From: Zygnema circumcarinatum SAG 698-1b
Lineage: Eukaryota; Plantae; Zygnematophyceae
DNA: 64,000 nt
Direction: 5' to 3'
Assembly (NCBI GenBank): GCA_037447605.1
Contig: CM074806.1
Span: 4,939,672 to 5,003,671, forward strand
Positions 9,804-63,198 of the stretch are shown in pieces. The first letter of the stretch is position 1; every line of letters begins with the position of its first letter. The position numbers and the translations under genes are program-made. Under the pieces are notes generated by a model that had not been told where the DNA came from, ran no database searches, and saw nothing but the letters and a program-made list of their open reading frames with translations.

Positions 9804-12800
9804 TCATCGTTCCCACAGTGCCTTCACTTGCTCCTGCAAGCGCCTGAGCTGTGCGGCCACCTTCCCTGTCACGACTCCTCCCGCCAGCAGCGCGGCGTCA
9901 ACAGCGTCGGCCACAGCCTCCAAATCAACAACTTCATGGACGGCCTCCTTGGGGAAGAGCGCGGGCAGCGCTTCCAGTGCCGTCGCGCACATGCGAAGAG
10001 CCTCTGCCCGCCTCGCAGCTTTAGCAAACTCTGTGCGAGGAACAAGCAGCAGCAGAGAGCCCAGTGCGGGCAAAAGAGGACGGAGAGCTTCAGCGAGCCC
10101 AGGCAGGGTGGGGCGACGTTGGAATAAACGCTGGAGAAACTGACAAGCTTCCGCACGTACAAACTCGGTGCGCCCCTTGGAGCAATAATGCAGCAGAGGA
10201 GGGAGAATTTCAGCGCCCACCCAGGGATATCGCTCCACAGCGCGAGTGAAAAACGACATTGGGAGGTGGCTCCGCTTGCCCAAAGCAGTATCCATGGCTT
10301 TGGCCATCACTCCCTGCAAGGCCTGTGGCCCCCCTGCTGCTTGCAGGACCTTCAGGACCCACAAACAACAACTGCCAGCTGTCTCTGCCACTCGGTTGTT
10401 GAGTGCTCGAGCTGCGACATCCATGCACTCCTCCAGCACAGTTTGGACACGCGCCTCCTCGACATGTGAGCCCTTTGGATAATCGCCACGTCCAAACCGT
10501 CGTCGGAGCAGAGCTTCGATAGCAGAGGCAAGAGAGGCGGTGGGGGAGGCCTGGGCCCCCGCGAGCGCCTGCAGCAGCGGCACGGGGACTTCCAGGACTA
10601 GGGGACTCCCTGGACAGCGCCGCAAAAACGTGTCCAGCAAGCCGAGGACTCGCAGGCGGAAGTGCTCTCGCTGAGTCTGGAGGCTCTTGCTGCTGTCAGC
10701 CTCCTCCTTGGCCAGCTTCAGACGCTGAGCTAAGAGACCGTCGATTCGGAACATCGCCTCATCATCAAGCGGCTCATCGTCACTTTCATCGTTGCCATCA
10801 TCATGATTGCGAGCTGAGGAAACTTCTTCCAATGCTGCTGTAAGCTTGGCATTGCCATCGACACTAGGCTCTTCTTCTCCGTTCTCCAATTCGACTGGAA
10901 GATCGTCATCCTCTCCTTCCAAAGGGCTATCATCATCATCCTCCTCACTGCTGTCCTCAGCAATCAGTGTCTGTTCCTCACCTTCAACAGCACGCTGTCG
11001 GCGAGTATTGGAAGGGGTCTCTCTAATAACGCGAAGGAGGTCCTGGATAGAAGTTTGTGTGAGGTCATCACAGAAGGCATCAAAACACTGCTCCACAGCA
11101 CTGCGGATCGGGGGAGATGGCTGCGTGAGAAGCGAGAGCATGATGTCCAGCAAGACATCCATCGCCTGTGGAGGATCAGCATCAGCTGAAGGCCCCCCTT
11201 CTGCCTGAAAGGCTATAACCGAAGGGAAGATACGACAAGTGACAGCTGCGAGCTCTTCGGCAACTCCGAGGCCGGGGTCAGTAAAAAGCAGCCCGTGCAG
11301 CAGCGAGAGGGCGAATACCTCCTCCAGTGACTTCGCACGGCTGTCATTAGTTTCTACCTGAGGGAAAACCAAACCCCGCACTTCACGTCAGTCTCAACTC
11401 TGGAAGCCGGCGATTCTCATGCTGAAACAAGAAAAGACACTTGATGAAGAACAGGCTGAATTTGCAGACTTCTTCTATAAGAATAATGAGCTTTTTTAGT
11501 AAATATTTTTCTTCCGCTAAAAGTTCTTCTTTGTGGGAATCAATATTTTCTCCTTGTTTATAGTTTTCTTTTATTTCTTTAAAAAAAGTAATTAGTTGTC
11601 TAATTTCTTGCTGTAGAGAGTTAAAATGTGACAATAGAGTTTCATTAGGAATTTTGCAAGCTTCCACTTCCATCATTACAATCTCCGCCTCAGTGCCGCT
11701 AACAATCGTTTCTAAATTGTTCTCCTGGCTTATTAAATCAGCAGCAGCTAATAAAGGTGCTTGAAAGTTATGCTTCTCACCAGGTGGGAGCTCAAGCTCT
11801 GCAGACTCGCATGGAGCTGCTTCACAGTTTTGCGATTCTCAGGGGTGAGAGGAGTTGCGAGTGGGCAAGCAGCACTGCGGACACAGCGCACAGCGAGGCC
11901 GGCCAGCTGCGCCGGCAAGCGTGCAGCTTCCGTCTCAGCGCCGTCTTGCGCGCTAAGCTGTCGGCCCCCTGCCTTGGGAGCAGCTCGCCGAACAGCCGCC
12001 AGCAGAGCAAGGAGCCTTTCTCTGCACAGGGTACGAGTGGCAAGGGAAACGGCAACGTCTGGCCCCTCATTTGCCTCGGCTGGCAGCCACTTACATGAAG
12101 TGGGTCCTGGGGGCAGCTGACAAAGCGCATGCACAAGAAGAAAATGCAAGACCTCTCTCTGCAATCGGGTGCATATTCCCGCGGCCCCAGAAATTTGGGG
12201 CTGGCGGCATGCAGCGACCATTTGCTCCACAATGAGCCGCCTTCGCTCGCTCACTATGTCATTCAACTCGACTATTCTGGTCCCAGTCTCTCCTGTCGTC
12301 GTGCAAGCCTCCAGGAAAGATCTTCGAAGCGAAGCAACGAGAGTCTGAGCCCCGGCTGGATCAAGGCCCACTGTCAAACGGGCTACAGCACCAGTGTGAG
12401 TGAGAGCATCAAAACGGCCTCTCGAATGCTCCTGCAAAGCGCCCAAAAGAGCCGCGCGAGCAGCCCCATGCTCCTCTGCCCAGGCCTCCAGACGCGCTAG
12501 GCAGCGCTTGGCAGAAAAATGTAGCAGTGTCTTCTTGTCCTTGAGAGCATCCACGAGGCACCGCACAAGGGGCTTTGAGACAAGGGACGGCGCCTGCGCT
12601 GCGGGGAGCCGAGGCAGCATGAGCAGCAGCAGCTCCAAGGCCAGATGCCGCCTCTCATGGCTGGACAGCAGGAGGCCTTCATCCACCACCGTCCTCCAAA
12701 AGACCGCCACTTGTTCGAGTCCACATGGGGAGCCCAGCCTCTCCACATCCAGCGTCGATTTCTTTTTCTTCTTCTGATTCGTAACGTGTTTGTCCTCAGA

Positions 12801-14680
12801 GGGAGAAGGCAGTAGAAGTTCCAATAGAATGCCCCACACCGCATGCACACGGGGATGGCTACTGGACGAGGCCTGCACGCATAAGCAAGGGAGCCATTCC
12901 ATTAGAATAGATGACCTAAATTTTGAACAATCAGAAGCATTAGCACAATCATGAGCATGCAGGGGGAAGGGGAGAAGGAGAGGCAAGGGGGGGGGAGCTG
13001 AGAGAGTTCCAGGTATTATGTGCAGAAAAGGGTAGACGATAAATGTAAAGAAAAGGCAAGTTAAAAATAGAAAACGTTGCTCAAATGACGGCAGGAGAGA
13101 GGATAAAATAGAGAAAGAGAGTGAGGAGCCAAAGCAAGAGCCACGATGTATCTAGTCCAGTGTGGAGAAGAACTCAAACGCTACTGAAACTAGAACAGTG
13201 AACGCATGGAAAGGATTTTCGGCAAGGGAGTCAACCAAAGAGGTGACAGGGGGAAGTAGATATAGTTAGACACGATCGCATGATTGAATGCGCCAGGCCC
13301 AACTCGGTGGAGGTTATGACCTGCACGGAGATAGGAGGGATGAACATTTGCACACCTTAAGGATAGGAACAAGGCGTTCCAAATGTTCTTTTGAAAAAAA
13401 ATCGGTCACATTGGAAGTAGTCGGCAGCAAACTGCATTTAGAATGCACATCATCCGGGAGGCGACGCCATAGTTTTAATGCTAAGAGAAGGTTCTCCGGC
13501 GTTGCTTCCTCTGCCGGAACTTGAAGCCAGTCGATAAGCACGGCAGAATCTGCCAAACATCTTCTCAAAACGCTTTGTGGCAGCTGCAGGCCCAAAACAA
13601 GAAGAATTTCTTAAAATCTCTGAAGATGCAGGTGCATCGCAATACCGGGTCATTACTTCTCTTCATAACTTCAGCCGGGTAAGCTCGCCAATCACATGCC
13701 TCGCATGCTCCGAACAGGACCTCTGCAGCTCACCTGACGAGCCAGCTCGAGGAGCGCCTCCGCCGCGGGCTCCCTGAGGAACGACTTGCGCTGCGCCAGG
13801 CGGACGAGGGCCTCGGCGACCTGCTGGGCCGCCTGCCCCGCTTCCGCACCTTCTCTGCTCAGTCCGCCGGCGCGCACGAGCGCTGCGTAAGCAAACAGTC
13901 GTCCAAGGAGAACATCGTTCGTGTCCTGAACCCTAACCTCCCTCCACCCGGTCCCGTGAATCCCTTCCAGCTCCAGCAGCTGCAGAGGCTGTCTATCAAG
14001 CAAAAAGAATTTCCATATGTGAGTACCAGAGAAGTCTTACCTGTCCTTTCAGCTTGGCAGAAAGCTCCAAATGCTTCTCAATCAGCGGAAGAACAAACTC
14101 AGTTTCCATTCCTTCGACGGAAAGAAGAACAGCTGTAAGCGCGAGTGCATATCCTTGCCGCGCACCCTGCAGATGACAGTTTTCGTCCCCGCCCATTGCA
14201 AGCGTTAGAGCAGCAGCTTCAAAACCTGCCAGCAGCAGCAGCAGCAACGGCGGCGGCGGTGGCGGTGGACGCGGAGCTTACAGCGCGGGAGGAGCCGAGC
14301 CCGCGGAGGAGGCGCTTGAGCGCGTACTGCGAGTCCCCTCCGGCCTGCAGTTCGCGCACCAGCGCAGTGGCAGCCTCCTGGCGCCGCGCCGCGTGGGTGG
14401 AGGCGAGGTGGTCAAAGATTGCCAGCCCCACTGGAGGCTCATCAGAAGCCCCTTCCCCGCCTCCGGCACCATACCCCTCCCCCTCCGCCTCCGCCTCCCC
14501 CTCTGCCTCCGCCAAGGCAGCATCCTCTGCCTCCTTATCGTCCTGGGAGGCAGCCTTCTCCTCCGCCTCTGATCGCACCTCCAGGACCGCCTGCGCCTCA
14601 GAGTCCACCTGTCGCCGCCTGCGCTTGCGTTTGGGGGCGGCGCTAGCAGGCGCAGGCGCGTCGGGCAGGCGCTTGGCCAT
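9804..14680 (-). CDS. MYBBP1A: MYBBP1A / DNA polymerase V (Pol5) family nucleolar ARM-repeat protein, 6 exons, about 1,196 aa
   Basis: Exons (minus) 14680-14282, 14166-14041, 13925-13734, 13583-13356, 12872-11781, 11357-9804, all phase-0 GT-AG. Motifs: YALKRLLRGLGSSR-AGARQGYALAL, LLGRLFAYAALVRAG, SHPRVHAVW, LLSSHERRHLAL, LLDIMLSLL, acidic tract then DEAMFRID, HFRLRVLGLL. Confidence 0.9.
11460..11770 (-). pseudogene. pnp: AT-rich fragment resembling bacterial polynucleotide phosphorylase (end of RNase PH domain 1 and start of the helical domain) inside MYBBP1A intron 5
   Basis: Open frame reading NLETIVSGTEAEIVMMEVEACKIPNETLLSHFNSLQQEIRQLITFFKEI, which matches the PNPase pattern L.L.VAGT...I.MVE..A..V.E...L.......EI..LI.F..EI without gaps. 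Hand count gives about 26% GC over 11461-11640, with A/T-ending codons, against GC-rich flanking exons. Confidence 0.65.
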
Positions 14681-15071
14681 GGCGGCCGTCGGGAGGGCGG
14701 GAGGGAGGGAGAGGACAAGGGTGAGCGCGGCGGCGGAGGAACGACGGCGAGGGGCCCCCGCTGCCGTATAGTCGTCCGTACAGCAGCCGTACGACGGTAC
14801 CTCGAATGGCAGTACAGTACGACGGTGCGGCGCGAGTCGTATGCGAGCGAGGGCGGGCGAGAGAGAGCGAGAGAGGGGGCAGGGCCGACGGGCGGGAAGG
14901 AGAGAGGGAGAGAGTGGGAGGGATAGAGAAAGAGGGAGGGAGGGAGGAAGGGAGGGAGGAAGGGAGGGAGGGAGGGAGGGAGGAAGGGAGGGAGGGAGGG
15001 AGGGAGGAAGGGAGGGAGAGGGTGGAAGGGAGAGAGGGTGGAAGGGAGAGAGAGAGAGATAAAGGGCAGCC
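14681..15071. promoter_or_regulatory. Bidirectional promoter/leader shared by MYBBP1A (-) and DnaJ paralog 1 (+), with a GTAC cluster and (GGGA)n tract
   Basis: 391 bp between divergent ATGs. Five GTAC within 14777-14820; GA-rich microsatellite about 14880-15058. Confidence 0.7.
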
Positions 15072-18000
15072 ATGGTGCGGGAGACGGCGTACTACGACCT
15101 GCTGGGCGTGCCGCCGACCGCCTCGCAGGAGGCCATCAAGAAGGCCTACTACGTGCAGGTGCGCGCCTCACCGCCCCTTCTCGCCTGTTGTTCTCTTCTC
15201 CTTTGGAGCTTCCGCTCACGCGGCGCGCTCTGCGTGTGCTCAGGCGCGGAAGGTGCATCCCGACAAGAACCCCAACGACCCGCAGGCAGCGGCTAAGTTC
15301 CAGGTGAGCTTTGCGAATTGTGAGGTGCTTGGCCGCGCCATGGTTGCGGACTGCATGCAGCGCTCGTAGAGTCGTGCGAGCAAGGCATGAAGCATGATGG
15401 AAGGAAACACCTTGAAGCGCTACAGGCGGAGATTCTGGATTTGGAGGAGCTTTCAGGAGCTGGGAAATGCGTATCAAGTTCTCAGCGACCCGAAGCAGCG
15501 AGAGCGATACGATTCTGTGGGAAAACATGGCGTCTCCATGTATGCCTTTCGGCCCTCCTCGCGCCTTCTTTGCATAGTCTATCCCGCATCCATGGTGTGC
15601 GCAGGACTGGCCAGCCAGGACTTGTCACTGGCCTGAGGCCCGCTGCCACTCCCAGAGGCGATGCCGATCAACTGCTTTTCATGATTTCTTAGCTCATTTA
15701 GCTTATTTTCATGACGCTAAGTTTGCAAAATGATTTTAAGTATGGCTGCAAAAGTCACACAATGTGCAGTTAGTGCATTAGCTACCAGTCCGGTAGCTGA
15801 TCTTCGGCTAATCCCGTTAACGTCTCCCCTGAATCTACAGCATCAATAATAGTTTTAAATGAATGACCATGACGTTGACGCGAGTGGCGTTTCATGACAT
15901 GGCCGCAGGGAAATGATGGATCCGGTGCAAGTATTCGGAATGCTGTTTGGAAACGAGGTGTTTGAGGAATATGTTGGGCAGCTCCGCCTGGCCACATTTG
16001 CCTCAGTGGCCAGTGAAAGCGGTGGAAGCAGCTATGCGTCTGTAACGCATGGAGGAGATATTGGGGCAGATCCACAGGGGTTTAACATTCAAGATCTTCA
16101 GGGAAAGTTGAATGTAAAGCTACTGGACCATTCGTCCCTGCTAAGTCTAGTTGTACTGCATTCGTCTACAATGACTTGCTATTCCATAAAGACACGCCAT
16201 GCCTCCTTTCTCTCATCTGGCTCCCTGATTTCGGCTTCGAGTTATTATGGAAATTACGAAGGAGCGTCAGTAGCTTTGGCTGAACTAGCAATCAGCACGG
16301 TTTGGGATATGCGGGCTGTTGTTGAAGGGCCATTGACCCTTAACGTGTGTCATCTGTGCGGGGGATGCTCAGGCCACCCAGACAGAGCGAGTTGGAAAGC
16401 TGGTAGAGCAGCTGAGGGAGCGCCTGCAACTGCATGTGCTGGGAGCTAGAGAGGGCTTCCAGGCATGGGCCATGGGAGAGGCAGACCGGCTAGCCCACGC
16501 TTGTATGTGTGTGACCTTCTTCTCTTCGTCAAGGAAGTTGCTTAGTGCGTCAAACACCATTTGGTATTGAGGTTTGCATTTATGCCAGCCCTCCAACTCA
16601 TGCTAGCTTTTTGTGTTTTTGCGTAATTTGCAGCCTTTGGTGAAGAAATGCTGCAGACAGTAGGATACATGTACGAGCACATAGCTGCCAAGCACCTCGG
16701 CAAGAACCCTTCGTACCTCTTTCTGCCATATTTTGCAGAGGTGGTTTTGGAGAAAGCCCATTTAGTAAACACCAACTTTTCTGCAATCGGAGGTGCGCTA
16801 TCGTCCAACCTTTCCTGCGGAATATCACATTCAATTTATGTTTCTGTGACAGGGTCAGAGCGGGCCTATAGTCTTACAGAGTCTGATGTATTGTAGTGGG
16901 TCGTCTGATGCGTGGTGCAGGTGCCTTTCAGCTGATGCAGCTGCAGCTCAGCATGCGCGAGCAATTGGGCGCAGAGCAGATGGATGAATCAGCCATTGGG
17001 GCGTATTTGGAAAGCAAACAGCAGAGTCTGCTGAATTCGTTGTGGAAGCTGAACGTGGTGGACATCGAGCACACTCTGGTTGCTGTCTGCACTCAGGTGG
17101 GATGCAGGCCATGCTTGCTGACGGGCTTCATGCAGGTATCAGTGGTGGGGAGATCTCGTCCGTTCTCTTCAGTGAATGGCTTCCAAGGCCAGGCAGTGTG
17201 CAGTTTCGGGGCCTGCAGCTGCTCGCTGTGGTGGTGACTGTGCAGCATTCTGAAGAGGGTGCTTTCGGCCTCCCTGCTTGGAGGGGCAGGTGCTAACAGA
17301 GCCAGATGTGTCCCAAGAGATTTTACAGAAGCGAGCGGAGGCGCTGAAGCAACTTGGCATGACGTTTCAGGCACGGCTTATCCCTTTGCTGTGAACATGC
17401 GGCATTGGTCAAGATCGCTTACCGTTGTGGTAGTAATGGCGAGTGAGATTGGTCCCTTTTGTTGAATGAGGGGAGGTTGGAAAGGATAGTGAGGGATAAT
17501 TGAAGGAGAAGCTGAGCTGCCACATGTGGATTGCAGAATTACAAGAACAAGAATCACCACATTGGACGTATCAATGGGGGCTTTCATCCAAGTGCAGCTG
17601 CCTCTGAGCGCACTCCCTCTGCGGGCCATGGAGGAGGGGTGTTTGGCGGCTTCAGCTTTTTTTCACAACAACACCGGGTGATTGATCCTCTCATCTTCCT
17701 GATTTCAGGCACAGCTGTCTATTCCCAGTTTGCATTTCAATATTGCTAAGAAAGGCTTGACCCTGAACTACGGCATGCATTGTTTAACTTAGCATGTCTG
17801 GCTTTTATTCATCGTAGAAGAGGAGGACAACGGATCATAGCCTCGTGTTTTCTAGAGTTCTAGAATTATGTTGACGTCTCATTGGTCAATGTGACGGTCA
17901 GAGCAGGCAATGGAAGCAGCCTGTTGAGGTGACACAAGAAGGGACTCTGAGATTGCCTGCTGACATGTGAGCTGTTCATTTTTTGAGCTGCTCTCTGATG

Positions 18001-19071
18001 ACAGTGAGGGGGCGCTTGTCATCTCAGGATGGGAAAGCAGAGCAGGTAAGCGAGGAAACGTCCACTTCTGGGAACGAGGAGAAGCAGGAGAGTGGCGGTA
18101 GCAGCTTCTTCACCGCATTTTTCACACCCGCTCAGGTGAGTCGAATTGCAAGTGCCATGATGTTTATTTCATTCAGCTGAAATTGTTTAAGTTTACACCA
18201 GCTTCAACTCCGCTCTTAGGTCGTTTGTTATCTGTGAACTATCCTAGCATCAGGTGTATGTCAGAGAAACCAGGTGGCCAGTTATAGGCGAATTGCTGGC
18301 CTTTGGATACAATCGTTCCATTCGCAGTTTTTCTCTGTTGTTTTGTTTTGCGTGGTCCATTATTTATTTACTTGGGCTTCATTGGTGGTTCCAGTTTTAT
18401 TTCGCGATTGTATTATGTGTGATCTGTTAGTAGACGATTGAATCATTCTGATTTACAAGTTTTTTCATTCTTCATTCTTTTAATATGTGAAGATTCAACT
18501 GTTGGTCCTCTACGTATCGGATTGACTGCTGAGCATCAGGAATGCAGGATGTTTCGCATTTCTACGAGCATTAGACCTTGCCAGAAATGTTAACGTTGCG
18601 CTGTGTTGCGAGGCAGGGAGCCGAAGGCAAGGGGACGCAGGCGGCAGCTTCCGATAGCCAGAGCAGCGCGGCGCAGTCGTCGGACACCTCTCACGTCGCT
18701 GCGAACCCGGCAAAAGGGTTCTTCGACCTGTTCTCTCCTTCTGTGGTGAGCACTGGAGCCATCCACCTTCTCCTCTCTGCTTCCAAAGGGGTGAGGAATC
18801 CCTGCTGCTGTTGTTAAAAGTGAGGCACCTTTTGTGGTTGTGAGGGCAGAAGCCCAAGGACGGTACAGCTGCTTCAGCCGCTGCCGCCGCTGGGAGCACC
18901 TCCGGCACTGACTCTGCGGAGGCGTCGAAGCCTTCCACGTCCAAAAGCCTGACTGACATCTTCAATGACTTGAAGGTCAATTGGACACAGCCTCCAAAAG
19001 CACCCGTTCAAGCGCCTACTCTTAGTTCTTCGCCGCAAAATCCGACGGAGAAGAAAGTAAACCTGTCATAG
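15072..19071 (+). CDS. Chaperone DnaJ10-like protein, paralog 1 (J-domain + DnaJ-X domain + low-complexity tail), about 12 exons
   Basis: Exons 15072-15158 (YYDLLGV), 15244-15303 (HPD motif), 15457-15539, 15909-16113, 16373-16502, 16634-16792 ([13 protein letters not shown]), 16921-17096 ([10 protein letters not shown]), 17290-17370 (GC donor). Tail exons 17537-17677, 18028-18135, 18617-18745, 18850-19071 are phase-consistent but lack homology support, so the 3' end is less certain. Confidence 0.85.
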
Positions 19072-23894: not shown

Positions 23895-26800
23895 ATGTCT
23901 CCTGTGAAGGACACCGAGTACTACGACCTGTTGGGGGTGCCCTCGGACGCTGATGCAAGCGCCATTAAAAAGGCCTACTATATGCAGGTTGGTCAGCGTG
24001 CCGTGCAGGGGCAGAGCACGATACAGTAAGGGTACACGGAGCACGAAGAACTGCCCCTTCGGTGTTCGGATTTGAAATTTCATGGAGCACCTTCTCTTTT
24101 CAGTCTGTATGAATTGAGGCAGGCCATGATCCTGAGTGATAGTTGTGGAAACACGGCTGTTTCGGGTACAGGCACGCAAGGTTCATCCTGACAAGAATCC
24201 CAACGACCCGGGCGCTGCAGCGAAGTTTCAGGTTTGGACTTTTAACTCCTTAACCGGTCATACTAAAGCTGAAGAATGCTGCTCTTTGGACACTAGTTTA
24301 CCATACGGGGAGGGGAACAGGCGCTGGGAGAGGCATATCAGGTGCTCAGTGATCCGGAGCAGCGCAAGCGATACGATGAGGCGGGAAAGTCTGGCGTCTC
24401 TACGTAAGCGACGGCGCTGCTAATGTGCTGTTGCCCATTACCACTCGATATCAGGGTTGCTTGCAGAGGACACCTGAAAGCTTTTTAAATATTTTTCAAC
24501 GTTTACCGTATCTTCTTGTGTTATCTGCCCCTTGCAAGGTATGCTTATAATCTCTATTTTTGCTTGTCGTCGGTCAGGGAGCAAATGATGGATCCAACAC
24601 AGGTATTTGGAATGCTATTTGGAAGTGAGGTCTTTGACGAGTACGTCGGACAACTGCGGTTAGCGACTGTTGCGTCTATGGCTGCCGATGCCGGTGGAGC
24701 CTCTGCAGACGATCTAAGCAAGCCTGGAACTGCAGGTTCCATTGATACTGATCAGCTACAGCAAAAGCTTAACGTGTGCTTGCTCAACCATTCAACTTCG
24801 TGTTCACAGAAGTGCTTCTGAGAGTTCTTGGATCAGGCGAACCTTTCTGTTGACCTGGGATAGTAGCAAAGAGGCTGGCTTGGGGGGGGGGCAAGCAGAG
24901 TGAGATTTTTTGCTGATGGAGAAATTTAGCTGGCAACAGAGTGTCTTCGTGAATGTTTTGATATGTTTGAAACCGCGATACTTGCCTCAGTTTGTTTTTC
25001 GTGCAATCACTTGAGCTGAGAATAAGTTTTCGGTGGCCATTTTCTCGTAGTTTTTCGCTTATGCTTTCAATCTATATGTAATGAAAAGTCTTGTTTTACA
25101 GGTTTTTTCAGCTGTTTTTCAGCTTGTTGACATTTTAGAGGAGATTTGTTGGTCGAGGACAGGTAACACAGGAAGACCGGGTCAAAAAACTGGTTGAACA
25201 GCTGAAGAATAGGCTCCACTTATACGTTTCTGGGGATAAACAAGGCTTCCTTGCATGGGCAGAAAGCGAAGCGGAGCAGCTCGGTCATGCTGGTAAGCCT
25301 GTTACTTTGACCCTTAACGAGCTTTCAGTATGATGCAGGATAGGCCCATTTGTCTAAACAAGTACACTTTGAAAGAAGCATTGAACTCAAATTTCAACTT
25401 GAAGGAAGCATCCAAGAAGCATAGGATGTAGGTGAGTTGCAGCGGTATTCTCAAGGAGTTTTTGGGTATGGTCTTGGGCAGCATTTGGGTTGGAGATGCT
25501 GCAGACAATAGGGTACATGTACGAGCGTATTGCAGCTAAACAGCTAGGGAAGAATCCAATGTATTTGGGACTGCCATTCGTGGCAGAGTGGCTTCGAGAC
25601 AAAGGCCACCGCGTGCACAGCAGTGTCACTGCCATCCAGGGTGAGCTCTCTGCATTTCTGAACTTTGCTCTGCAATGTCTACAATGGCGTCCAATTGTCA
25701 CATGAAAGACCTTGATTTGAAAGTTGGAGATCCAGTTTCGTTGGGAACTTTTCCACGAAAGCAATGTTACCATACCACTGAGGGGTTAACATCAAAAGCC
25801 TATTCTGAGATCATTGATTAGAGAAGTGAAGTTCTGGCCAACTCATTCATCTCGAGCAAGAGTGCGAACGAGTTCTCTGTCAATGCACAAATGTTTATCA
25901 AGCAAAGTGCACAGAAACATAGCGTCATGTCCCTTTTTGTTACGAATGATAAAAACTATGTCATGGGGGGGAAATGCAGGCGCCATCCAACTCATGCAGC
26001 TTCAGCAAGAGGTAAAGGAGCAGTTCACAGGGGCGGAAACTGCTGATGAAACAGCCATGTCACAGTTCATGGAAAGTCGGCAGCAGTATGTCCTGCAGTC
26101 ACTGTGGAAGTTGAACGCTGTGGACATTGAGAACACCCTTACAACAGTTTGTACCAGGGTGAGTTGGATTAGAAGCTGTTCTGAAGCCAAGCGTATTCCA
26201 CTGAGTAGGAGCACTTACTTTCGGCATAATCAATCACGGGCTTTATTTCTTCTGGGGTAAACAAGAGTATTTCATGTCCAACAAGTTCATGACTCATGTC
26301 ATAAAGCTTTCTCACAGGAGGCTGCCTGCTTGCTGGAGTGGAAAGATATATAGACTGGCGACAACATATGTGTGGAAGTAAGGTTAAGGTGCCGTCCATG
26401 TTTACGTCAGAATAAGGTTTATTTTGAGCTGCAGTGAACGTAAACAGGGCGGCCCATCGTGCAGCAGTTGTTGGCTGAATAATATTACTAATTTCTGGCG
26501 TAGATAACTTGGCTGTTGCTGCTGTTGGCGAGCTCTATTTCTGGCCAAGTTTCATAGGTTGGTAGACGAAAGGACATGTGCGTATACTGCAGGTGACTCT
26601 TTTTGAAAGGTAGAAAGGCAATTTGTTCATTTCTTTGGCCAGAGAAAACGAAATCAGGCATAGGTTGGTGTTTTCATAAGCCGAAGTGAGAACTGTTTGG
26701 AAACAGGTGCTAGCAGAGCATGGAGTTCCGAAGGACATACTGAAGGCGCGTGCGAAAGGACTTAAAAAGCTGGGAGCGACTTTTCAGGTAAGGGCGGGTA

Positions 26801-30346: not shown

Positions 30347-33300
30347 ATGCAGCCATCTCCCACGGCCCCCGCCGTTGGCGGCTCGGGCTATCCATCGATC
30401 TCCATGCCACCTCCCTCGGCGCCGTGGCCTTTGCCTGAATATTCGCTCACCTCATCGTACACCGGCTACTCTCAGCCTCTCTCCACTAGCTACGAGCTGC
30501 CGCCTTCAGCCTCTGTGCCGGGCGACTATGTGCAGCCCTCTGCACCAGCAAGCTTTATGCCCTACTCTACTCCCGCTCCTGTGAATGCCAGGATGGAGAT
30601 GGCAGGAGGGATGGTGTATGGCGGTGCATACAACATGGAGCCGGGCGGCACAGACGGCACCGAGTACGGGGGTGTCGTGGCTTATCAGGGCGGCTCTGAG
30701 CCGTATGGAGCGCGCGGGACGGGCTCGGCCAGTTACTGGAGCGAGGCAGCCCCCTCTGGCGCTGCTCCCGCCCCTGCAGGTGCAGCTCCGGGGCCCAGCC
30801 CACCCCCTGCGGCAGCGGGGGCGCAGCGCTTCACTGTGAAGCTCTTGCCGGAGGGAGTCTCGTCAGAGCCGCCACGGACAGTGATCTGCCAGGTGCATTT
30901 TGGGGTCTTGGCCGCTGCTCGCCCTTTCTTGCAAGAGGCTATGAACTGGCAACTTGCTTGGGTGGGGGAGAGGTTCATGACCGCTCAATGAAAGTTTGCC
31001 CTTATGCAGATAGCTTTGGATGGCGTGCGGCTGCTGGAGCCCAGCAATGGACGGGTGCTCCGAGTGTATCCTTTGGAAACCATCATTTCGTGGGCGGTAG
31101 GTTTAGCATTCTGTTCAATCAGGGCGGCTTTTCACAATGAAGGTGGCTCTTGGTGATTCTGAGACTAGTGCAGCTGCCTGGGCGGGAATTAGTCTCTTCG
31201 GTAGGGGAAGACGTTTGTTGTTTCATGTTTTGTGGGGTCGTTTGGAGAAAGCAGGCCCTTTGTAAGTCCGTGGAGAGGGGTTGGTGTTCGGACAGGTGAA
31301 GGAGCCAACAGTGTTCACATTTTGGGCTCGCAGTGCTGTGGATGTCGAGCAGCGAGCAGTAAGGCTGCAATCGAGTGACTACACCACGGGGATTATTCTT
31401 GATGCTCTCACTGCTGCATGTGTTCAGGTATTTCTCCTTTCTTCCTTTGCTATGGTGGTGGACATTACTCGTAGTTAAAGCCCGAGGCCGTTTTCTAAAG
31501 CGACCCACCTACTGGGGGGTGTAGTTGCTTGAAATGGTAGGACAGGAAGGTTCCAAAGGAGGCAGCGGGAATGGCAGCAGCAGCAATACAGAGCCTGGAT
31601 CATCTGCACTTGAAAAAAAAAATGCAGGCCCAGCCGGGCTCATGGAGTGGGTGGCTGCTCGCGCAAAACCTCCAGTTCCCGAAGAGAAAGAGCACTGGGT
31701 AAGTCTTCTGCCAACCTGCTTATTCGGGAGCGAGGATGATGACTATGGGTGATGCTTCGAATGGAAGCCGTTTTGTCCTTTCTGGAGACAGGGCAAGGAG
31801 TGATTTGTGTGGAGGAACTGTGATTTTGGCAGGTTCCAGATGAGGCGGCGAGCAAGTGTGGAAGTTGTCATTCAGATTTCACAGCTTTTCTTCGGCGAGT
31901 GAGTTTATTCTGCTGGCTGCTGGCTTCTCGCTGCCCCTAATCCCAATAATCCCCTTATTTAATTCGTTTTGACTTTCTTTTTGCGCAGCTAGATTATTCC
32001 TATGTGATTGTGAAGAGACAGGCCTTAGCATTGTAACTGATTATGTAGAACATAATTTGTCTATCTGTGGGGCGAGATGTTGCAGCACCATTGCCGTAAT
32101 TGTGGTGGAATATATTGTGACAAATGCACACGTGGCCGCACTCCTTTAACATCAGAGCCAAATGCACCATCTGTGCGAGTTTGCGACCACTGCTTGGTAG
32201 GTTCTTATGAAAAATGAGCTCAGTTCTTCATTCGTTTCAGGCATGTTTTGATGCGTGCCCTATTGTTAATGCTCGTGTGTGTGTGCCGAAGTTTTGAGAC
32301 CTAAGTTAGGATTCGTTTTGTCCGTGGCGCAGGCGGAGGTAACCCAAAGGTTATCCAACGGCGGCGCTGAGACTGGCAGTCAGGGCGTGGCACGTTCTGC
32401 GTCACAGCGCACGCATGAAGATCTTGCAAAGAAGCTGCAGGTAGAGCGACCCTATCTGCCGGAGTTTGATGGTATCAGGCGGTGTTAGCACACACCCTGC
32501 CATATGTGTTTATTAAATTGAATTTACAGTGGTTTTTTGTTTTTAGCAGTCCCTGTCTACAAGCTAATGTTTTACATAGGTATGACCAAGAGATAAAGTA
32601 GAAGGTATGAAAATTAGAATCAGCTTCTGGTCGGCTTATTTCTTGATTGGAACATCTCGTAGTGCCTCGACGTCCTCAGCAAAGGGCAAAGAAACGTGAC
32701 TGGTAAGAGTGATTGAACAAGAAGAGGCAGAGAGGCAGGAAAGGGAGAGGCAGAAAATACTAGCATGGCATGTCTAATGCTTGTCCAGCAATAGTGGTGG
32801 ATATGGTAAAGCAGCAGGCATATCCCTGCATGGATGACAGACAGGGTGCGTGGCTAGAGATAGTTCTCAGTCTTGTTTGTTAAAGGCTGGTTAATGTAAT
32901 CCACCAGATGAGGCAGCTCCCTATGGAATTGTGAAGACTATGATCGAGGTTCGTCATATTCCTGGAGTGGAGCGTATGGAGAATGCTTGCACCTAGTATT
33001 ACAGATGAAGCAGCCGTGTCTGATCTGGCTCGTTTTTTGAATTGTTTGCTGGATTGCTCGTAGGAGGAGATGGAGCGTAACGCTGCTGCTCGACGAAATG
33101 TCGAAGTCTCTCGCACTCAGGGCTCAGATGGGCCGCCGCATGGAGCCTCGTGGATGCTCACTTGCTCGGGCTGCGGTATGGTGGCCATAGTGGCGGATGG
33201 AAGCAGCCGTTGCCCGGCATGTGGCAAAGAGAACGCGAGTCCTGGGGGAAGCGTCAAAGGAAATCCGGGCGTTCCCCAGGGGCCACCACATTTATGGTCT

Positions 33301-54300: not shown

Positions 54301-56788
54301 AGATGCAGCGCGGGGGGCGTTTGCGGTGTCTGAGCAATTTGCACTCGTCTTCCGGCAGGTACGGCCTCTGCTTGGGGATGCTCACAGACAGATTGAACAT
54401 GAAGACACAGTTTTTGTTTCAAATCTGTTAGGTTCACTGCTCAACGTGAGTAGAAAATGCAGGTTGTAGCCACATGCTCAGCCTCCGTTGGTGATGCGCA
54501 GGGAAGACTTGCAGCAGCCCTGTGTGGTGGTGGCTGCCCACCCCTCCTTGCAGTTTGGGCCTGCCTGCCACCTGATGCACAGCTGGGCCAAGCATTCTGA
54601 CTCGCTTGTCATCTTTACTGAGGTAAATTCATCCATTTTCTGTCTGCTCGCGGGTCACGACTCCAATGCTCACTGTTGACCACTGAGTATCTGAACAGAG
54701 GTTGATTAGCATGGAGATCATTTATAGGGTCTGATGCACAGGACTCTCCCGAGGACATCACAGGCTCTTTAATGCTGGGCAGTAGGCATGGTTGCTGAGG
54801 AGTAGGCCTGCTCGGATGCTTGCGGCTCGTAAGCCCTCCCATGAGCTGGCGAGGGGTGGTCTGCAGCCGCATGCGGACCCGCAGGTCCTGCTCAGCCCCT
54901 TCCGGCCGCTTTCTGTGCGCGTTCTGCACCTTCCCGTCAGCGCACTCTGGAGGTTTGCGCCTGCGCTCAACCCGGGGGCTGCTGTGCTGCCCTTGCTTTT
55001 CACTTTCAGTCTTGCATCTTTACTTAGGCTCATGGCTTTCAGGTGTTGGTCTTGACAAACTTTTGCTTGGAGGGGTCCGTAGAACTCAGAAAACAGTTAT
55101 GGTTTTGGACCTGTCCATTTTCTGCCCGGTATCCAGAACTTGTCAGTCCTAATGATCATTTTGAGGAGGTTTTACAACGTTTAGGATACCCGAAAGACCC
55201 TGCGGCTTTTTCCAAGAAACTCACTTTCGTATATAGGACTCGTGCTTTTGTTAAAACATTTTACTCGTTTCAGTTGAATTCTTAGAAGCATGCATTTTCG
55301 CGCATTTTTTCCGGTGCATTATGCGTATTATTCCGTAAACTTCCGTTACTCAAAATATGACTTGACTTGACTCAGCCAACTATGACCAGAACTGACTGAT
55401 TTTAACAGCGAGAACGGCTAAGGAAAATTGGGAACGCGCGTCCCTGAACGTGCCGCCGCTTTTCTTTAGCCGCAAAACGCTCCTATCCTCCCCGCTATAG
55501 GGCAGCCGCTTACTCGACCGTCATAGTCCTGAGGCTATTGACGATTGAGGGCAATGCCGATGCAATGTGAGGGAGTTTTTGGGTATGTCGACTTTGAGTA
55601 AATCGGCAGTAAGGAGGCCTTCCGAGGACTCTTGTCATAGAGAGGGAAAGTGTCTAATGTCTACTGATTAACACTTTATCGTTTTGTATTGATAATGAAT
55701 TAATGATCGATGCAATTCCTGCCATTGATTGATGCCACCGATGCTATGCCATGGTATTGCCATGCCATTATGCTCTATGCTTCCTTTTTTTTTTACATGA
55801 TATCCGAACGTACCATGTTGTTGTGTGGATTTGAGATGGTCAACGCATGGTCGACGAATTTATGCGCATGCAAAAGTTATTTTGAGATTGCTTGTCATGC
55901 GCCTGAAACGCACAGTGCTTCTATGGTCGAATCAGATCGCCCTTGATAGAATTGACCGAACGTGGACAGGTCCAAGTGAATGCATTCCATTGTTCCTCGA
56001 TTATCACATTCACAGATCCCATTTTTCACCCGATCCTCGTGACTATGCAACTTCTGTCAGCTCACCATCCTGTGGCCCGCGCAGTGTCTCCGACGCGGTG
56101 CAATTTGTCGAGGAGTTACAGCCGCAGCACATTTTGGTATGCACTCAATAGCAGACAGCATTACTGAAGAAACTCTGAAACTGATCAAGGAACTGATCGC
56201 ATCTGACTGCAGTGACTTTCCATGGCGCGCCTGCATGAGGAATGCAGAGTGGCGGGGTCTGACAACGGGGGGACACTTGTCTTGTGTGCTGCGAAGGCAT
56301 CGGCCCACGTGGCCAATCTTCTAAGAGCAGGAGGGACTGCTGCTAAGGTGACAGCCTATCACGAAGGGCAGAAAATGGAGGTCGGTGCATCGACAGAAAG
56401 CAGAGATGCTGCTGTCACAGACGAGCTGCTCACGTCATTTGGCAACAGTAGAAGAGAGTCTGGACTGAAGGCGGCGCGAATCTCTGGTAGCTTGCTAGAG
56501 CACAGACAAACGTGGGAGCTCCGACCTGAAGATGGCTCTCCAAAGAAGAAAGAGCAGCTCTGGGGGTACCTGGATTTTGACGAATTGGAGAGCCGTCTAG
56601 ATGCCGCAGGCTGCAGGACTATTCAGAAGAAAGGGCCTGGGTTTTTGTTGGAAGTAGAGGGACCCAATGGGAGCACTGCTGTTCTCTCTGGTGGAGGCGA
56701 GGGAGTTGAAGTGCGCAGCAATGACAGCAGAACACGGCATGCCATACAGGGAGCACTTTTGTCCTCACGAACGCTTAAGAGTCTTTGA
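51382..56788 (+). CDS. INTS9: Integrator complex subunit 9 (inactive metallo-beta-lactamase/beta-CASP), about 9 exons
   Basis: MRLHSLS start (alternative ATG at 51466); HALLLSAPSDILALPLL..Q|VYATE across a GC-AG intron 51652-52834; VTPHSAGAGLGSCVW, AGGRVLLP, VPLFYVSHVAEELLALANTLPEWL, QQPCVVVAAHPSLQFGPACHLMHSW, LSPFRPL, LQPQHIL. Stop at 56788. Confidence 0.85.
55105..55975. mobile_element. Candidate non-autonomous DNA transposon (MITE-like, 871 bp) in an INTS9 intron
   Basis: Perfect 13-bp inverted termini TTGGACCTGTCCA (55105-55117) and TGGACAGGTCCAA (55963-55975) bracket an AT-richer non-coding interior in the gene's longest internal intron. No target-site duplication found. Confidence 0.45.
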
Positions 56789-61300: not shown

Positions 61301-63198
61301 GGCGGCTGCACGGCACAGTCATTGGCCAGCAGGCGGTGCGACTCTCCTGGGGACGCAATCCTGCGGCGAAGCAGGTAGGCTGTTCTATTCACTTGCTGCG
61401 CGTACACTAAAAACCCTTTGTCGATAACCTGTTTTGGAGGAGAACCTTTGAAACCTGACCACTCATTCGCCAACCACTGGCTCGACCTATTGGGTCATGC
61501 ATAGTTAAGGTTGGTCTGTGTGCCAAGTAGTTGAACCGTAGATGGCTCAGAAGATTTAACCATATTTGTAACCGGATCACACATTTTTTGATAGTCGTTC
61601 ATGAAGCCGGAGGATTGTAGAACGTTGTTTAATTCTTGCTTTCATTTCTTGAGGCATGTTCTTGGATGAAAAAAGTGACTTGGAAAATTCACTAAATCAT
61701 GACCATGTATTTTGTGTGAACGAACACATATAACAGCACTTATTATTACAGGATACAAGTTCCACTTGTCGTCAGCGGGTGTTCAGTCTCCAGTTCTCGC
61801 TCACTCCATTTCATGCTTTTTTTCATGCTTTGGACTTCTTCCTTTTTATTGGAAATTTTTATCTATCACTCTTGACCTTCCTGCTACATTATCAAGTTGT
61901 AAGCGGCTATATATCGGAGCCAAGCTCCCTCCCTTTTTATCGGCGTCACATGAATTCACTTGTCCCGTCCATTTTTCAAGTCTTGCTACTTTGCGTGTGG
62001 TTCAGAGGCATTCTCAGGTTGGAGGGTGGTCGGGAGTTCCTCAAGATCCCAATGCCTGGAATCAGCAGCAGCAGCAGCAGCAGCAACAACAGGGATACTA
62101 TGGATACGGTCCTGGTTATGACCAGTACGGTTATGCCCAAGACTTCAATGCTTATGGCTATGGAGGATACTATGGAGGGTATCAGCAGCAGGTCAGTGTT
62201 TCACTATATCACGCTCATGTGTGTTCTCCCTTCTCTGTTTTTTGAGTCCTTTCGCTCCTGCGTCCTGGCGCAATGCACTTAAGGATTCAGGTTTTTTCGC
62301 TCGATTTCGTGATTGTTGTTTTTTTTTTTTTCTGTACTCCATTGCTCGTCCAGAAAGGAGTAGGAATGCTTTGTTCATTTATTGAGGTATCAACTGCTTT
62401 CTTTATCGGAGAATTTAATGTTGAAACCCTGGTGGCTGCGATCTGCCTATCGGCTTTCTTTTTGAGATGTCTTGGAGTGGTTGCCTGCAGCCAATGGCGT
62501 ATGGTGGGCCCAATATGGGTGGGGCTCCTGCTGCCCCTCCTCCCAGGCATGCCAAGGTGAGATAAGTTTCTAACCATGTACACAGAAAGCATTGCGTAAA
62601 TTGTTGATACTTGCAAACTTGTCGTTTGTTCAGAATTGTGTTGACGGCAGGTAGTTGTGCTCGTGTCATCGATGCGTCAAACACGACTTCAAGTTGACCA
62701 GTACATCCTGGAGCACGATCGTTCGAAAAATCTGTTTAATGTCGTAAGGTTTATTGAGTTGAGTTATGCTAACGAGGCACACTATGGCTGCAGCACGGAG
62801 GCCATCACCAGGGTGGCGGTGGAGGGGAGCGCAGAGAGGAGGAGGTGTTTGACCCCATGGCGCCGCCAAATGTGGACCGGTATGGCTTGAGAGGATTCTG
62901 TCCCTTGAACTCTCTGGTGGTGCCGCCGAGCCCATAGCTCCTGCTTCGTTGGTTGCGAGGTCAGGTCTGGTGGTGTTGCAATTACTTGACCGCATGCAGC
63001 CCGTGTTCCGATGTTGGCTGTGCTGGTCAGCAAACTGAAGGTCTGGAAGGACGGCCTCTTCTCTCTGGCTTTCTTTTTTGGCTAAAACTCCTTCCACTGT
63101 GTTTTGGCAGGATGAATCAGGCATACACAGCTTCCCACGATCCCTCCATGGGGCAGCATTTGTGGCTGAAGCCCCCAGAAAGCTCCATCACAGCCTGA
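58384..63198 (+). CDS. RBP45/RBP47-type polyadenylate-binding protein (3 RRMs, Q/G/Y-rich tail, TRNAU1AP-like C-terminal motif), 11 exons
   Basis: KTLWVGDLQFWMDETYLWNCFAHTGE, KVIRSKATGQSEGYGFVE, FRMNWASF, SVFVGDLA, GRSKGYGFVRF, DNDPGNTTIFVGGLD, KIPYGKGCGFVQF, VRLSWGR, EVFDPMAPPNVDRMNQAY. Stop at 63198. Confidence 0.93.

What the first reader, a model, noticed from the sequence alone, without database searches (positions are those of the whole stretch)
11358..11780. An intron made largely of captured low-GC bacterial PNPase (pnp) DNA
Seen: MYBBP1A intron 5 (423 nt, GTGAGA...CCTCAG) is about 26% GC over 11461-11640 and about 32% over 11461-11760 (hand counts), between GC-rich exons. It carries one frame open from the donor to 11383, sense to the host transcript, with TTA/ATT/AAA/GAA codon bias. 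Known: the translation LETIVSGTEAEIVMMEVEACKIPNETLLSHFNSLQQEIRQLITFFKEI lines up without gaps to the end of the first RNase PH domain of bacterial PNPase as I recall it (B. subtilis-type [48 protein letters not shown]; 17 of 48 identical by eye). Inference: a piece of a low-GC bacterial genome (Firmicutes/Mollicutes-like or another endosymbiont) was integrated and either created or filled this intron. An intact frame with foreign composition suggests a recent event and possibly an intracellular associate of this alga.
Basis: partly seen in the sequence, partly recalled or inferred. Interest (0 to 1): 0.85.

Follow-up and report, generated by a model that had tools for sequence, protein, structure and literature searches.

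The report
Foreign PNPase gene scrap in intron
A normally spliced 423-letter intron of a green alga's DNA-polymerase-phi (MYBBP1A-like) gene is about 70% filled by an AT-rich, still-open piece of a polynucleotide phosphorylase gene from an unidentified foreign donor, probably a bacterium. It is a small fossil of foreign DNA pasted into the algal nucleus, not a working gene.

Summary
The intron at 11358-11780 (minus strand, GT..AG) is real. Contigs from three independent studies skip exactly these 423 nt, and rarer unspliced contigs plus a DNA contig cross both junctions, so it is not an assembly chimera. Its core (11461-11757) has 32% GC, the lowest in the 64-kb window, between exons of 56-64% GC.

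One sense frame is open for 131 codons. It is homologous to the end of the first RNase PH domain of PNPase plus the following linker:
- NCBIfam TIGR03591, E=3e-6.
- BLASTP against E. coli PNPase, E=1e-5.
- My own 81-sequence PNPase HMM, 24 bits against at most 5 bits for 2000 shuffles.
- hhalign, 93% probability.

The homology is remote, at most about 35% identity to any sampled PNPase. No closer relative appeared in 1.84 billion representative proteins or in genome, metagenome or viral scans. Bacteroidota-like PNPases are no closer. The donor therefore cannot be named. A fast-evolving AT-rich intracellular bacterium is an inference, not a result.

Whether the insert created the intron or landed in an existing one could not be tested. 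Earlier notes of this scan report at least five other bacterial gene scraps in this genome, so this is one more member of a known kind.

The parts
11358..11780 (-). U2-type GT..AG spliceosomal intron, 423 nt, phase 0, of the DNA_pol_phi/MYBBP1A-like gene
   Evidence: Sequence GTGAGA...CCTCAG. A joint that 'skips 423' appears in contigs of runs X7, X9 and X20 from three studies. Unspliced low-depth contigs cross the donor (X7, 11408-11808) and the acceptor (X9, 11329-11661). DNA contig X2 spans the whole stretch.
11461..11757 (-). Low-GC (31.6%) PNPase-derived patch, equal to the HMM envelope (ORF residues 8-106)
   Evidence: GC values. Envelope 8-106 in my own PNPase HMM. GC by codon position is 47/22/25%, the pattern of an AT-rich coding sequence.
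11545..11727 (-). Core gap-free alignment to PNPase (ORF residues 18-78, E. coli residues about 171-231): end of the first RNase PH domain and start of the helical linker
   Evidence: TIGR03591 E=3.3e-6, profile 162-230. BLASTP E=1e-5. Own HMM 24.1 bits with 0/2000 shuffles above 5.1 bits. hhalign probability 93%, E=3e-7.
11383..11778 (-). 131-codon open frame, not in frame with either exon, closed by TGA at 11380-11382
   Evidence: Translation, shuffle test. The exon's own frame reads VRSITFKHLY then a stop (the ORF's end coordinate is 11748) if the intron is retained.
11358..11460 (-). 3' part of the intron with ordinary composition (48.5% GC), including the acceptor. Origin unknown: old intron sequence or other filler.
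   Evidence: GC. No significant similarity to the flanking exons or to the rest of the window.
11781..12986 (-). Upstream exon (its 5' limit was not mapped), DNA_pol_phi profile 203-515
   Evidence: Pfam PF04931 E=1e-46. RNA-type contigs are contiguous here.
9804..11357 (-). Downstream exon running to a stop codon, DNA_pol_phi profile 522-765
   Evidence: Pfam PF04931 E=5e-39. 45% identical to P0121 of a related organism.

Best explanation
A fragment of about 300 nt from the coding sequence of a polynucleotide phosphorylase (pnp) gene was pasted into the alga's DNA_pol_phi/MYBBP1A-like gene. It covers the end of the first RNase PH domain and the start of the helical linker. The source was an AT-rich foreign genome, most likely a fast-evolving bacterium that is not represented in sequence databases. 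The most likely mechanism is capture as filler DNA during end-joining repair of a chromosome break. The fragment lies wholly inside a GT..AG intron that is removed efficiently, so it has no effect on the host protein and no function of its own: it is a neutral passenger. Shown: the intron, its splicing, its contiguity with host DNA, its composition, its open frame and its homology to PNPase. Inferred: the bacterial donor, the end-joining mechanism and neutrality. Open: whether the piece landed in an existing short intron of roughly 125 nt (which I judge somewhat more likely, because it needs no new splice signals) or itself became the intron.
For: Splicing and contiguity: three studies show the exact 423-nt skip, unspliced contigs cross both junctions, and a DNA contig spans the whole stretch. 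Composition: the patch is the lowest-GC place in the window, at 32% against 56-64% in the flanking exons and about 45% in other non-coding stretches. Coding origin: a 131-codon open frame, reached by 25 of 20000 shuffles, and codon-position GC of 47/22/25%. PNPase homology by four methods, at the same collinear position: NCBIfam TIGR03591 and NF008805 (E=3e-6 and 4e-6); three PNPase chains among the top four PDB hits at residues 171-213; BLASTP against E. coli PNPase; my own HMM with shuffle and reversal controls. In addition, about 75 of 81 PNPases give a collinear BLASTP hit and hhalign gives 93% probability. Controls: six other low-GC open frames elsewhere in the window give no NCBIfam hit at E<0.1. 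The host protein alignment has no gap at the site, since profile 515/522 and the relative P0121 run straight across it. Context: unchecked notes of this scan report at least five other bacterial gene scraps in this genome.
Against: No donor or near relative was found anywhere. The fragment scores lower against every sampled PNPase (phmmer maximum 23 bits, median 14) than PNPases of different phyla score against each other (typically 25-60 bits). A normal gene from a sampled phylum is therefore excluded. Either the donor gene was aberrant or fast-evolving, or the piece has decayed, and decay sits uneasily with an intact 131-codon frame: P(no stop) is about 0.11 at 10% substitution and 0.013 at 20%. 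Three of the most conserved PNPase columns in this stretch are not kept: N and P of the NPT motif, and an invariant Ala. Pfam gives no hit. My PNPase sample lacks Firmicutes, Cyanobacteria, Chlamydiae, Dependentiae, Patescibacteria and eukaryotic organellar PNPases.
Confidence: 0.6

Rival explanations
1. De novo intron gain. The foreign piece was inserted into what was a continuous exon during break repair. It survived because it happened to carry, or sit next to, usable GT, branch and AG signals, so the insert itself is the intron.
For: The foreign patch fills about 70% of the intron and may reach to within 20 nt of the donor site. The intron is phase 0 at a ...CTG|GT... proto-splice-like site, and the host protein alignment is gap-free across it. 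The intron start GTGAGAAGC resembles the next exon's start GTAGAAAC (7 of 9 with one gap), as expected from a staggered-break duplication. Precedent: introns made of mitochondrial DNA in Daphnia and Bigelowiella, reviewed in PMC3443670.
Against: The junction repeat is not significant: 1.8% of all 12-mers and 13.6% of G|GT-starting 12-mers in the window reach it. The 103-nt 3' part has ordinary host-like composition, as an older intron would. Insertion into an existing intron needs no lucky splice signals. The only relative found (L082) is probably a transcript, so its continuity across the site says nothing.
Confidence: 0.27
2. The donor is not a bacterium. The piece comes from an AT-rich eukaryote, a giant virus or the alga's own organelle DNA or organelle-targeted PNPase gene.
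For: No bacterial lineage is detectably closer than any other, and no close relative exists in the libraries. PNPase also exists as nuclear-encoded organellar enzymes in plants and algae (established knowledge).
Against: The host's nuclear genes are GC-rich (GC3 57% in the neighbouring exon against 25% in the patch). Organelle genomes of green algae are not known to encode PNPase (my own knowledge, not tested). A viral-contig scan found nothing. The representative library, which includes eukaryotic and viral proteins, gave no hit.
Confidence: 0.1
3. Chance. An ordinary AT-rich intron whose open frame and PNPase likeness are coincidental.
For: All scores are low in absolute terms (24-31 bits). 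Pfam finds nothing. The protein-atlas search gave no usable hit. The finding was picked out by eye from much sequence.
Against: Four methods agree on the same collinear position, at E values of 1e-5 to 5e-10 for single comparisons. 0 of 2000 composition-matched shuffles exceed 5.1 bits, against 24.1 observed. The homologous frame is also the one open frame. The patch is the composition outlier of the whole window.
Confidence: 0.04
4. Assembly chimera or contaminant read-through.
For: None beyond the foreign composition.
Against: Independent contigs from four runs in four studies join the patch to both exons with 0 differences, and the patch is spliced out precisely as an intron.
Confidence: 0.01

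Closest known systems
Spliceosomal introns containing organelle-derived filler DNA (Daphnia 16S-derived intron; Bigelowiella intron of mitochondrial DNA origin, Curtis and Archibald 2010, as cited in PMC3443670)
   Same: A stretch of foreign, AT-rich DNA of recognisable gene origin makes up most of a GT..AG intron of a nuclear housekeeping gene and is spliced out. Capture during end-joining is the likely mechanism.
   Different: The source is not the cell's own mitochondrion or plastid but a PNPase gene of an unknown, probably bacterial, genome. Creation of the intron by the insert is not shown here.
Nuclear integrants of bacterial DNA in eukaryotes (for example Wolbachia fragments in insect and nematode chromosomes; my own knowledge, not read here), and the other bacterial scraps noted by this scan in this same genome (gpmI, infB, sufB, EF-G, a two-gene fragment)
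   Same: A short, non-functional piece of a bacterial housekeeping gene sitting in a neutral site (intron or spacer) of a host chromosome.
   Different: Those cases have identifiable donors (gpmI is reported as about 86% identical in DNA to uncultured Bacteroidota). This piece has none, and Bacteroidota-like PNPases are no closer than others. Unlike most of them, its frame is unbroken.
Bacterial polynucleotide phosphorylase (TIGR03591 / PRK11824)
   Same: Collinear homology to profile positions 162-230. It keeps the G-T, M-x-E and S/N-E landmarks of the strand-helix at the end of the first RNase PH domain.
   Different: Only about 100 of about 700 residues are present. The second (catalytic) core, KH and S1 domains are absent. 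The score is far below the family cut-off (25.8 against 525 bits), and the piece is more divergent than inter-phylum PNPase pairs.

Membership tests
PNPase (TIGR03591, polyribonucleotide nucleotidyltransferase) | Significant, collinear sequence similarity to the family profile | tested here: met
   E=3.3e-6 with ORF 18-87 on profile 162-230. Own HMM 24.1 bits against at most 5.1 for 2000 shuffles. hhalign 93%.
PNPase (TIGR03591, polyribonucleotide nucleotidyltransferase) | Whole-protein score above the curated cut-off, and the full architecture (two RNase PH cores, helical domain, KH, S1) | tested here: not met
   25.8 bits against a cut-off of 525. Only about 100 residues of the first core and linker are present. 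It is a fragment derived from a family member, not a member gene.
PNPase (TIGR03591, polyribonucleotide nucleotidyltransferase) | Conservation of the near-invariant residues of this segment | tested here: inconclusive
   G21, M28, E30 and E38 are kept. N4, P5 and A44 are not (alignments A1 and A3).
U2-type spliceosomal intron | GT..AG ends and precise removal from RNA | tested here: met
   GTGAGA...CAG. The exact 423-nt skip is seen in contigs of three studies.
Intron gained by break repair with filler DNA | Intron absent at the orthologous position in close relatives | tested here: inconclusive
   Only one distant relative was found (P0121/L082, 45% identity). It is continuous across the site but is probably a transcript contig.
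Intron gained by break repair with filler DNA | Short direct repeats flanking the intron | tested here: inconclusive
   7 of 9 matches with one gap. This level is reached by 1.8% of all 12-mers and 13.6% of G|GT-starting 12-mers in the window.
Intron gained by break repair with filler DNA | Intron body recognisably derived from unrelated DNA | tested here: met
   PNPase-derived, 32% GC patch.
Recent bacterium-to-nucleus DNA transfer | High nucleotide or protein identity to an identifiable bacterial donor lineage | tested here: not met
   No hit in 1.84 billion representatives, genome contigs, metagenome contigs, viral contigs or the 90% clusters of short proteins.
Recent bacterium-to-nucleus DNA transfer | Physical continuity with host DNA in independent data | tested here: met

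The most novel reading that the evidence does not exclude
The patch is a nearly undecayed sample of the genome of an unsampled, fast-evolving AT-rich intracellular bacterium that lives or lived in this streptophyte alga, and its capture created a new spliceosomal intron in an essential gene. That would be the first intron shown to be built from bacterial DNA. Together with the other bacterial scraps in this genome, it would record an ongoing rain of symbiont DNA into the nucleus of a close algal relative of land plants.
Probability: 0.15. Interest if true: 0.75.

Novelty: new member of a known kind. Interest (0 to 1): 0.45.

Why it matters
It is a cleanly documented case of recognisable foreign coding DNA sitting inside, and making up most of, a working intron of a housekeeping gene in a green alga related to land plants. 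If comparison with sister species shows that the insert made the intron, it would extend filler-DNA intron gain from organelle DNA to bacterial DNA. Together with the other scraps noted in this genome, it suggests that this alga's nucleus repeatedly takes up bacterial DNA. That is raw material for horizontal gene transfer and may be a trace of past or present intracellular bacteria. On its own it is small, non-functional and of unknown source.

Tried and rejected
- Pfam on the open frame gave no hit. Rfam on 11200-11950 gave none, so there is no known intronic snoRNA or other known RNA family here. The protein atlas gave no usable hit.
- tblastn against plasmids found nothing.
- phmmer against 1.84 billion representatives gave nothing at E<=1e-3. 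By my calibration this means no representative reaches about 36 bits. That is roughly 25-30% identity over the 100-residue segment. A member hidden behind a 50%-identity representative could still be closer.
- The search for related loci with the open frame found no relatives in genome, metagenome or viral collections.
- The search for homologous proteins with the open frame (proteins of 72-229 aa only) found none.
- The E. coli PNPase search returned only Enterobacterales, which were useless for diversity.
- Exon-duplication origin of the intron's 3' part: a 10-nt exact repeat TGAGAATCGC lies about 52 nt upstream of both splice sites, but alignment scores are not above shuffles (21 of 500). 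Rejected.
- Target-site duplication at the junctions is not significant.
- Bacteroidota as donor, a lead from earlier scan notes: three Bacteroidota-like PNPases (L085-L087; the phylum assignment rests on my recollection of their N-terminal motif) score 14-26 BLAST bits, no better than Proteobacteria.
- Ortholog comparison: only one relative turned up, probably cDNA with a frameshift. Its run accession is in no held paper.
- No phylogeny was attempted. At most about 35% identity over about 60 alignable residues cannot place a lineage.

Full report
**Observation**

On the minus strand the sequence reads ...CACCTG|GTGAGAAGC...TTTTCCCTCAG|GTAGAAAC..., giving a 423-nt GT..AG interval at 11358-11780. 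The neighbouring 300 nt of exon have 64% and 56% GC. In 300-nt windows this is the only place in the 64-kb window below 36% GC; other non-coding stretches sit around 42-48%.

One sense frame (11778 to 11383) is open for 131 codons and ends in TGA at 11380-11382. The other two sense frames have 13 stops each. Only 25 of 20000 dinucleotide-preserving shuffles give an open run of 132 or more codons in any of six frames. In the PNPase-like part, GC by codon position is 47/22/25%, the signature of a coding sequence from an AT-rich genome. The host exon next to it has 73/45/57%.

**The intron is real and the assembly is sound**

I laid Logan contigs of four runs from four studies on 10400-12800.
- A DNA contig (X2) covers everything with no difference.
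- In X7, X9 and X20, high-depth contigs join 11355/11357 to 11779/11781, skipping exactly 423 nt with CT..AC on the plus strand (GT..AG on the gene strand).
- Low-depth contigs in the same runs retain the intron and cross the donor (X7, 11408-11808) and the acceptor (X9, 11329-11661).

The patch is therefore physically joined to both exons in independent data, is transcribed as part of the pre-mRNA, and is removed precisely. These runs are not on record as RNA; their behaviour (spliced contigs, 28-51 M letters) indicates that they are. If the intron is retained, the exon frame reads VRSITFKHLY and then a stop.

**Host gene**

Both flanking exons belong to Pfam DNA_pol_phi (PF04931), the MYBBP1A/Pol5 family. 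The upstream exon covers profile 203-515 and the downstream exon 522-765. The intron therefore interrupts the protein at a point where nothing is missing.

**PNPase homology**

Pfam gives no hit, but other evidence agrees on one collinear position.
- The two NCBIfam PNPase equivalog models are the only hits in that library. TIGR03591 gives E=3.3e-6, with ORF 18-87 on profile 162-230 of 689.
- Three of the four best PDB sequences are PNPases, aligned at chain residues 171-213.
- BLASTP against E. coli PNPase fetched from NC_000913 gives 30.8 bits and E=1e-5. It matches 15 of 44 residues, ORF 18-59 on residues 171-214.

I then fetched 80 PNPase loci from named bacterial genomes. They include Gamma- and Alphaproteobacteria, Pelagibacter, Midichloria, Buchnera, Legionella, Myxococcota, Planctomycetota, Calditrichia and an Elusimicrobiota member. 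I built an HMM from them plus E. coli.
- The frame scores 24.1 bits (E=5e-10 for one sequence), aligned without gaps, residues 18-78 on profile 179-239, envelope 8-106.
- The reversed sequence scores -1.3, and the best of 2000 composition-matched shuffles scores 5.1.
- About 75 of the 81 PNPases give a BLASTP hit at the same collinear place.
- hhalign against a 25-sequence profile of that segment gives 93% probability and E=3e-7.
- As natural controls, six other low-GC open frames elsewhere in the window have no NCBIfam hit at E<0.1. The antisense frame of the patch gives only a marginal hydrophobic match at E=0.008.

I conclude that the patch derives from a PNPase coding sequence: the last strand-helix of the first RNase PH domain and the beginning of the helical linker.

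**How far it is from known PNPases**

Identity to any sampled PNPase is 22-37% over 30-70 residues and 10-26% over the whole 100-residue segment. Of the seven most conserved columns it keeps G, M, E and E, and has lost the N and P of 'NPT' and an invariant Ala.

Calibration with real PNPase segments: pairs 25-30% identical score about 38 phmmer bits, and pairs 30-35% identical score about 46. The intron frame reaches at most 23 bits (median 14) against the same segments. From the PDB search (14.2 bits at E=0.46 in 177,635 sequences), E=0.001 in the 1.84-billion library needs about 36 bits. The empty phmmer result therefore means that no representative is more than roughly 25-30% identical over the segment. 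A close relative hidden behind a 50%-identity cluster representative is not strictly excluded.

Direct scans with the frame found nothing in genome contigs, metagenome contigs, viral contigs and the 90%-identity clusters of short proteins.

**The Bacteroidota lead**

Earlier unchecked notes of this scan describe at least five Bacteroidota-like gene scraps elsewhere in this genome (gpmI, infB, sufB, EF-G and a two-gene piece). I followed that lead. Three PNPases recovered from viral contigs that look Bacteroidota-like, by an N-terminal motif I recall, score only 14-26 BLAST bits. That is no better than Proteobacteria. The donor lineage is therefore unassigned, and I did not attempt a tree.

**Age**

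The frame has 65 single-base changes that would create a stop. The chance of staying open is 0.34 at 5% substitution, 0.11 at 10%, 0.013 at 20% and 0.0015 at 30%, before counting frameshifts. The composition has not relaxed towards the host's roughly 45% non-coding level. Both points argue for limited decay in place.

The extreme divergence then has to come mostly from the donor: an unsampled, fast-evolving AT-rich lineage or an already degenerate gene. Buchnera's PNPase in my set shows how far an AT-rich endosymbiont drifts (27% identity to a fellow gammaproteobacterium over this segment). This reasoning is inference, and a moderately decayed older insert that escaped stops by luck is not excluded.

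**Created or filled**

The foreign envelope occupies 11461-11757. About 20 nt remain at the 5' end, and 103 nt of ordinary composition (48.5% GC) remain at the 3' end.
- The 3' part has no significant similarity to the neighbouring exons.
- A 10-nt exact repeat lies about 52 nt upstream of both splice sites, but it is within chance.
- The resemblance between the intron start and the next exon's start (7 of 9) is reached by 1.8% of all 12-mers and 13.6% of G|GT-starting 12-mers in the window.
- The only relative recovered, P0121 on a 2528-nt Logan contig, runs straight across the site. It is 45% identical to the downstream exon and has 42% GC. It has a frameshift and a 3' untranslated tail and is probably a transcript, so it is uninformative.

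I judge insertion into an existing short intron somewhat more likely than de novo intron creation, because it needs no fortuitous splice signals. The data do not decide.

**Mechanism and comparison with known cases**

Capture of stray DNA as filler during non-homologous end joining is the established route for organelle DNA into nuclear genomes. It has been proposed for introns made of mitochondrial DNA in Daphnia and Bigelowiella (review PMC3443670). The present case works like those but with a non-organellar source. It also resembles bacterial-DNA integrants known from hosts of intracellular bacteria (my own knowledge).

It is not a member of the PNPase family in the functional sense. It has about 100 of about 700 residues, no catalytic core, and 25.8 bits against a cut-off of 525.

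**Verdict**

It is one more member of a class this scan has already met several times in this genome. The unbroken frame, the exact splicing evidence and the absence of any known relative are its notable features.

Noticed in passing
window 14841-15073 (both strands): A strongly strand-skewed purine/pyrimidine low-complexity tract (GC skew up to 0.84) sits just upstream of or overlapping the 5' end of the DNA_pol_phi gene. It reads as (LPPS)n on the minus strand and (GREE/GGRE)n on the plus strand.
   Followed up: no
window 18311-18560, 24951-25170, 61551-61770 and eight smaller patches: Other low-GC patches (34-37% GC over 150-250 nt) exist in the window. Open frames of 60 or more codons in some of them (18238-18438, 32478-32675, 55671-55859) have no NCBIfam match, so no further bacterial scrap was detected in those frames; the other patches were not tested.
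   Followed up: partly
window 11410-11419 and 11832-11841: An exact 10-nt direct repeat (TGAGAATCGC on the gene strand) lies 51-52 nt upstream of both the acceptor and the donor, with spacing 422 against an intron length of 423. It is within chance by shuffle test.
   Followed up: yes
L082 (Logan SRR8128904 contig, 2528 nt): The only detectable relative of this DNA_pol_phi gene is a 42%-GC contig with a frameshift in an A/G-rich homopolymer region around nt 335-420. Either it is an assembly error or the relative's gene is broken.
   Followed up: partly
P0017: A 946-aa 'hypothetical protein' of the fungus Astraeus odoratus is 93% identical to enterobacterial PNPase and also carries TPR domains like the neighbouring E. 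coli gene nlpI. It looks like bacterial contamination with a fused gene call in that fungal assembly.
   Followed up: no
window 11564-11761 (+): The antisense strand of the patch has a 66-codon open frame with a marginal hit to undecaprenyl-diphosphate phosphatase (E=0.008, 15.7 bits). This is most likely noise from a hydrophobic antisense translation.
   Followed up: no
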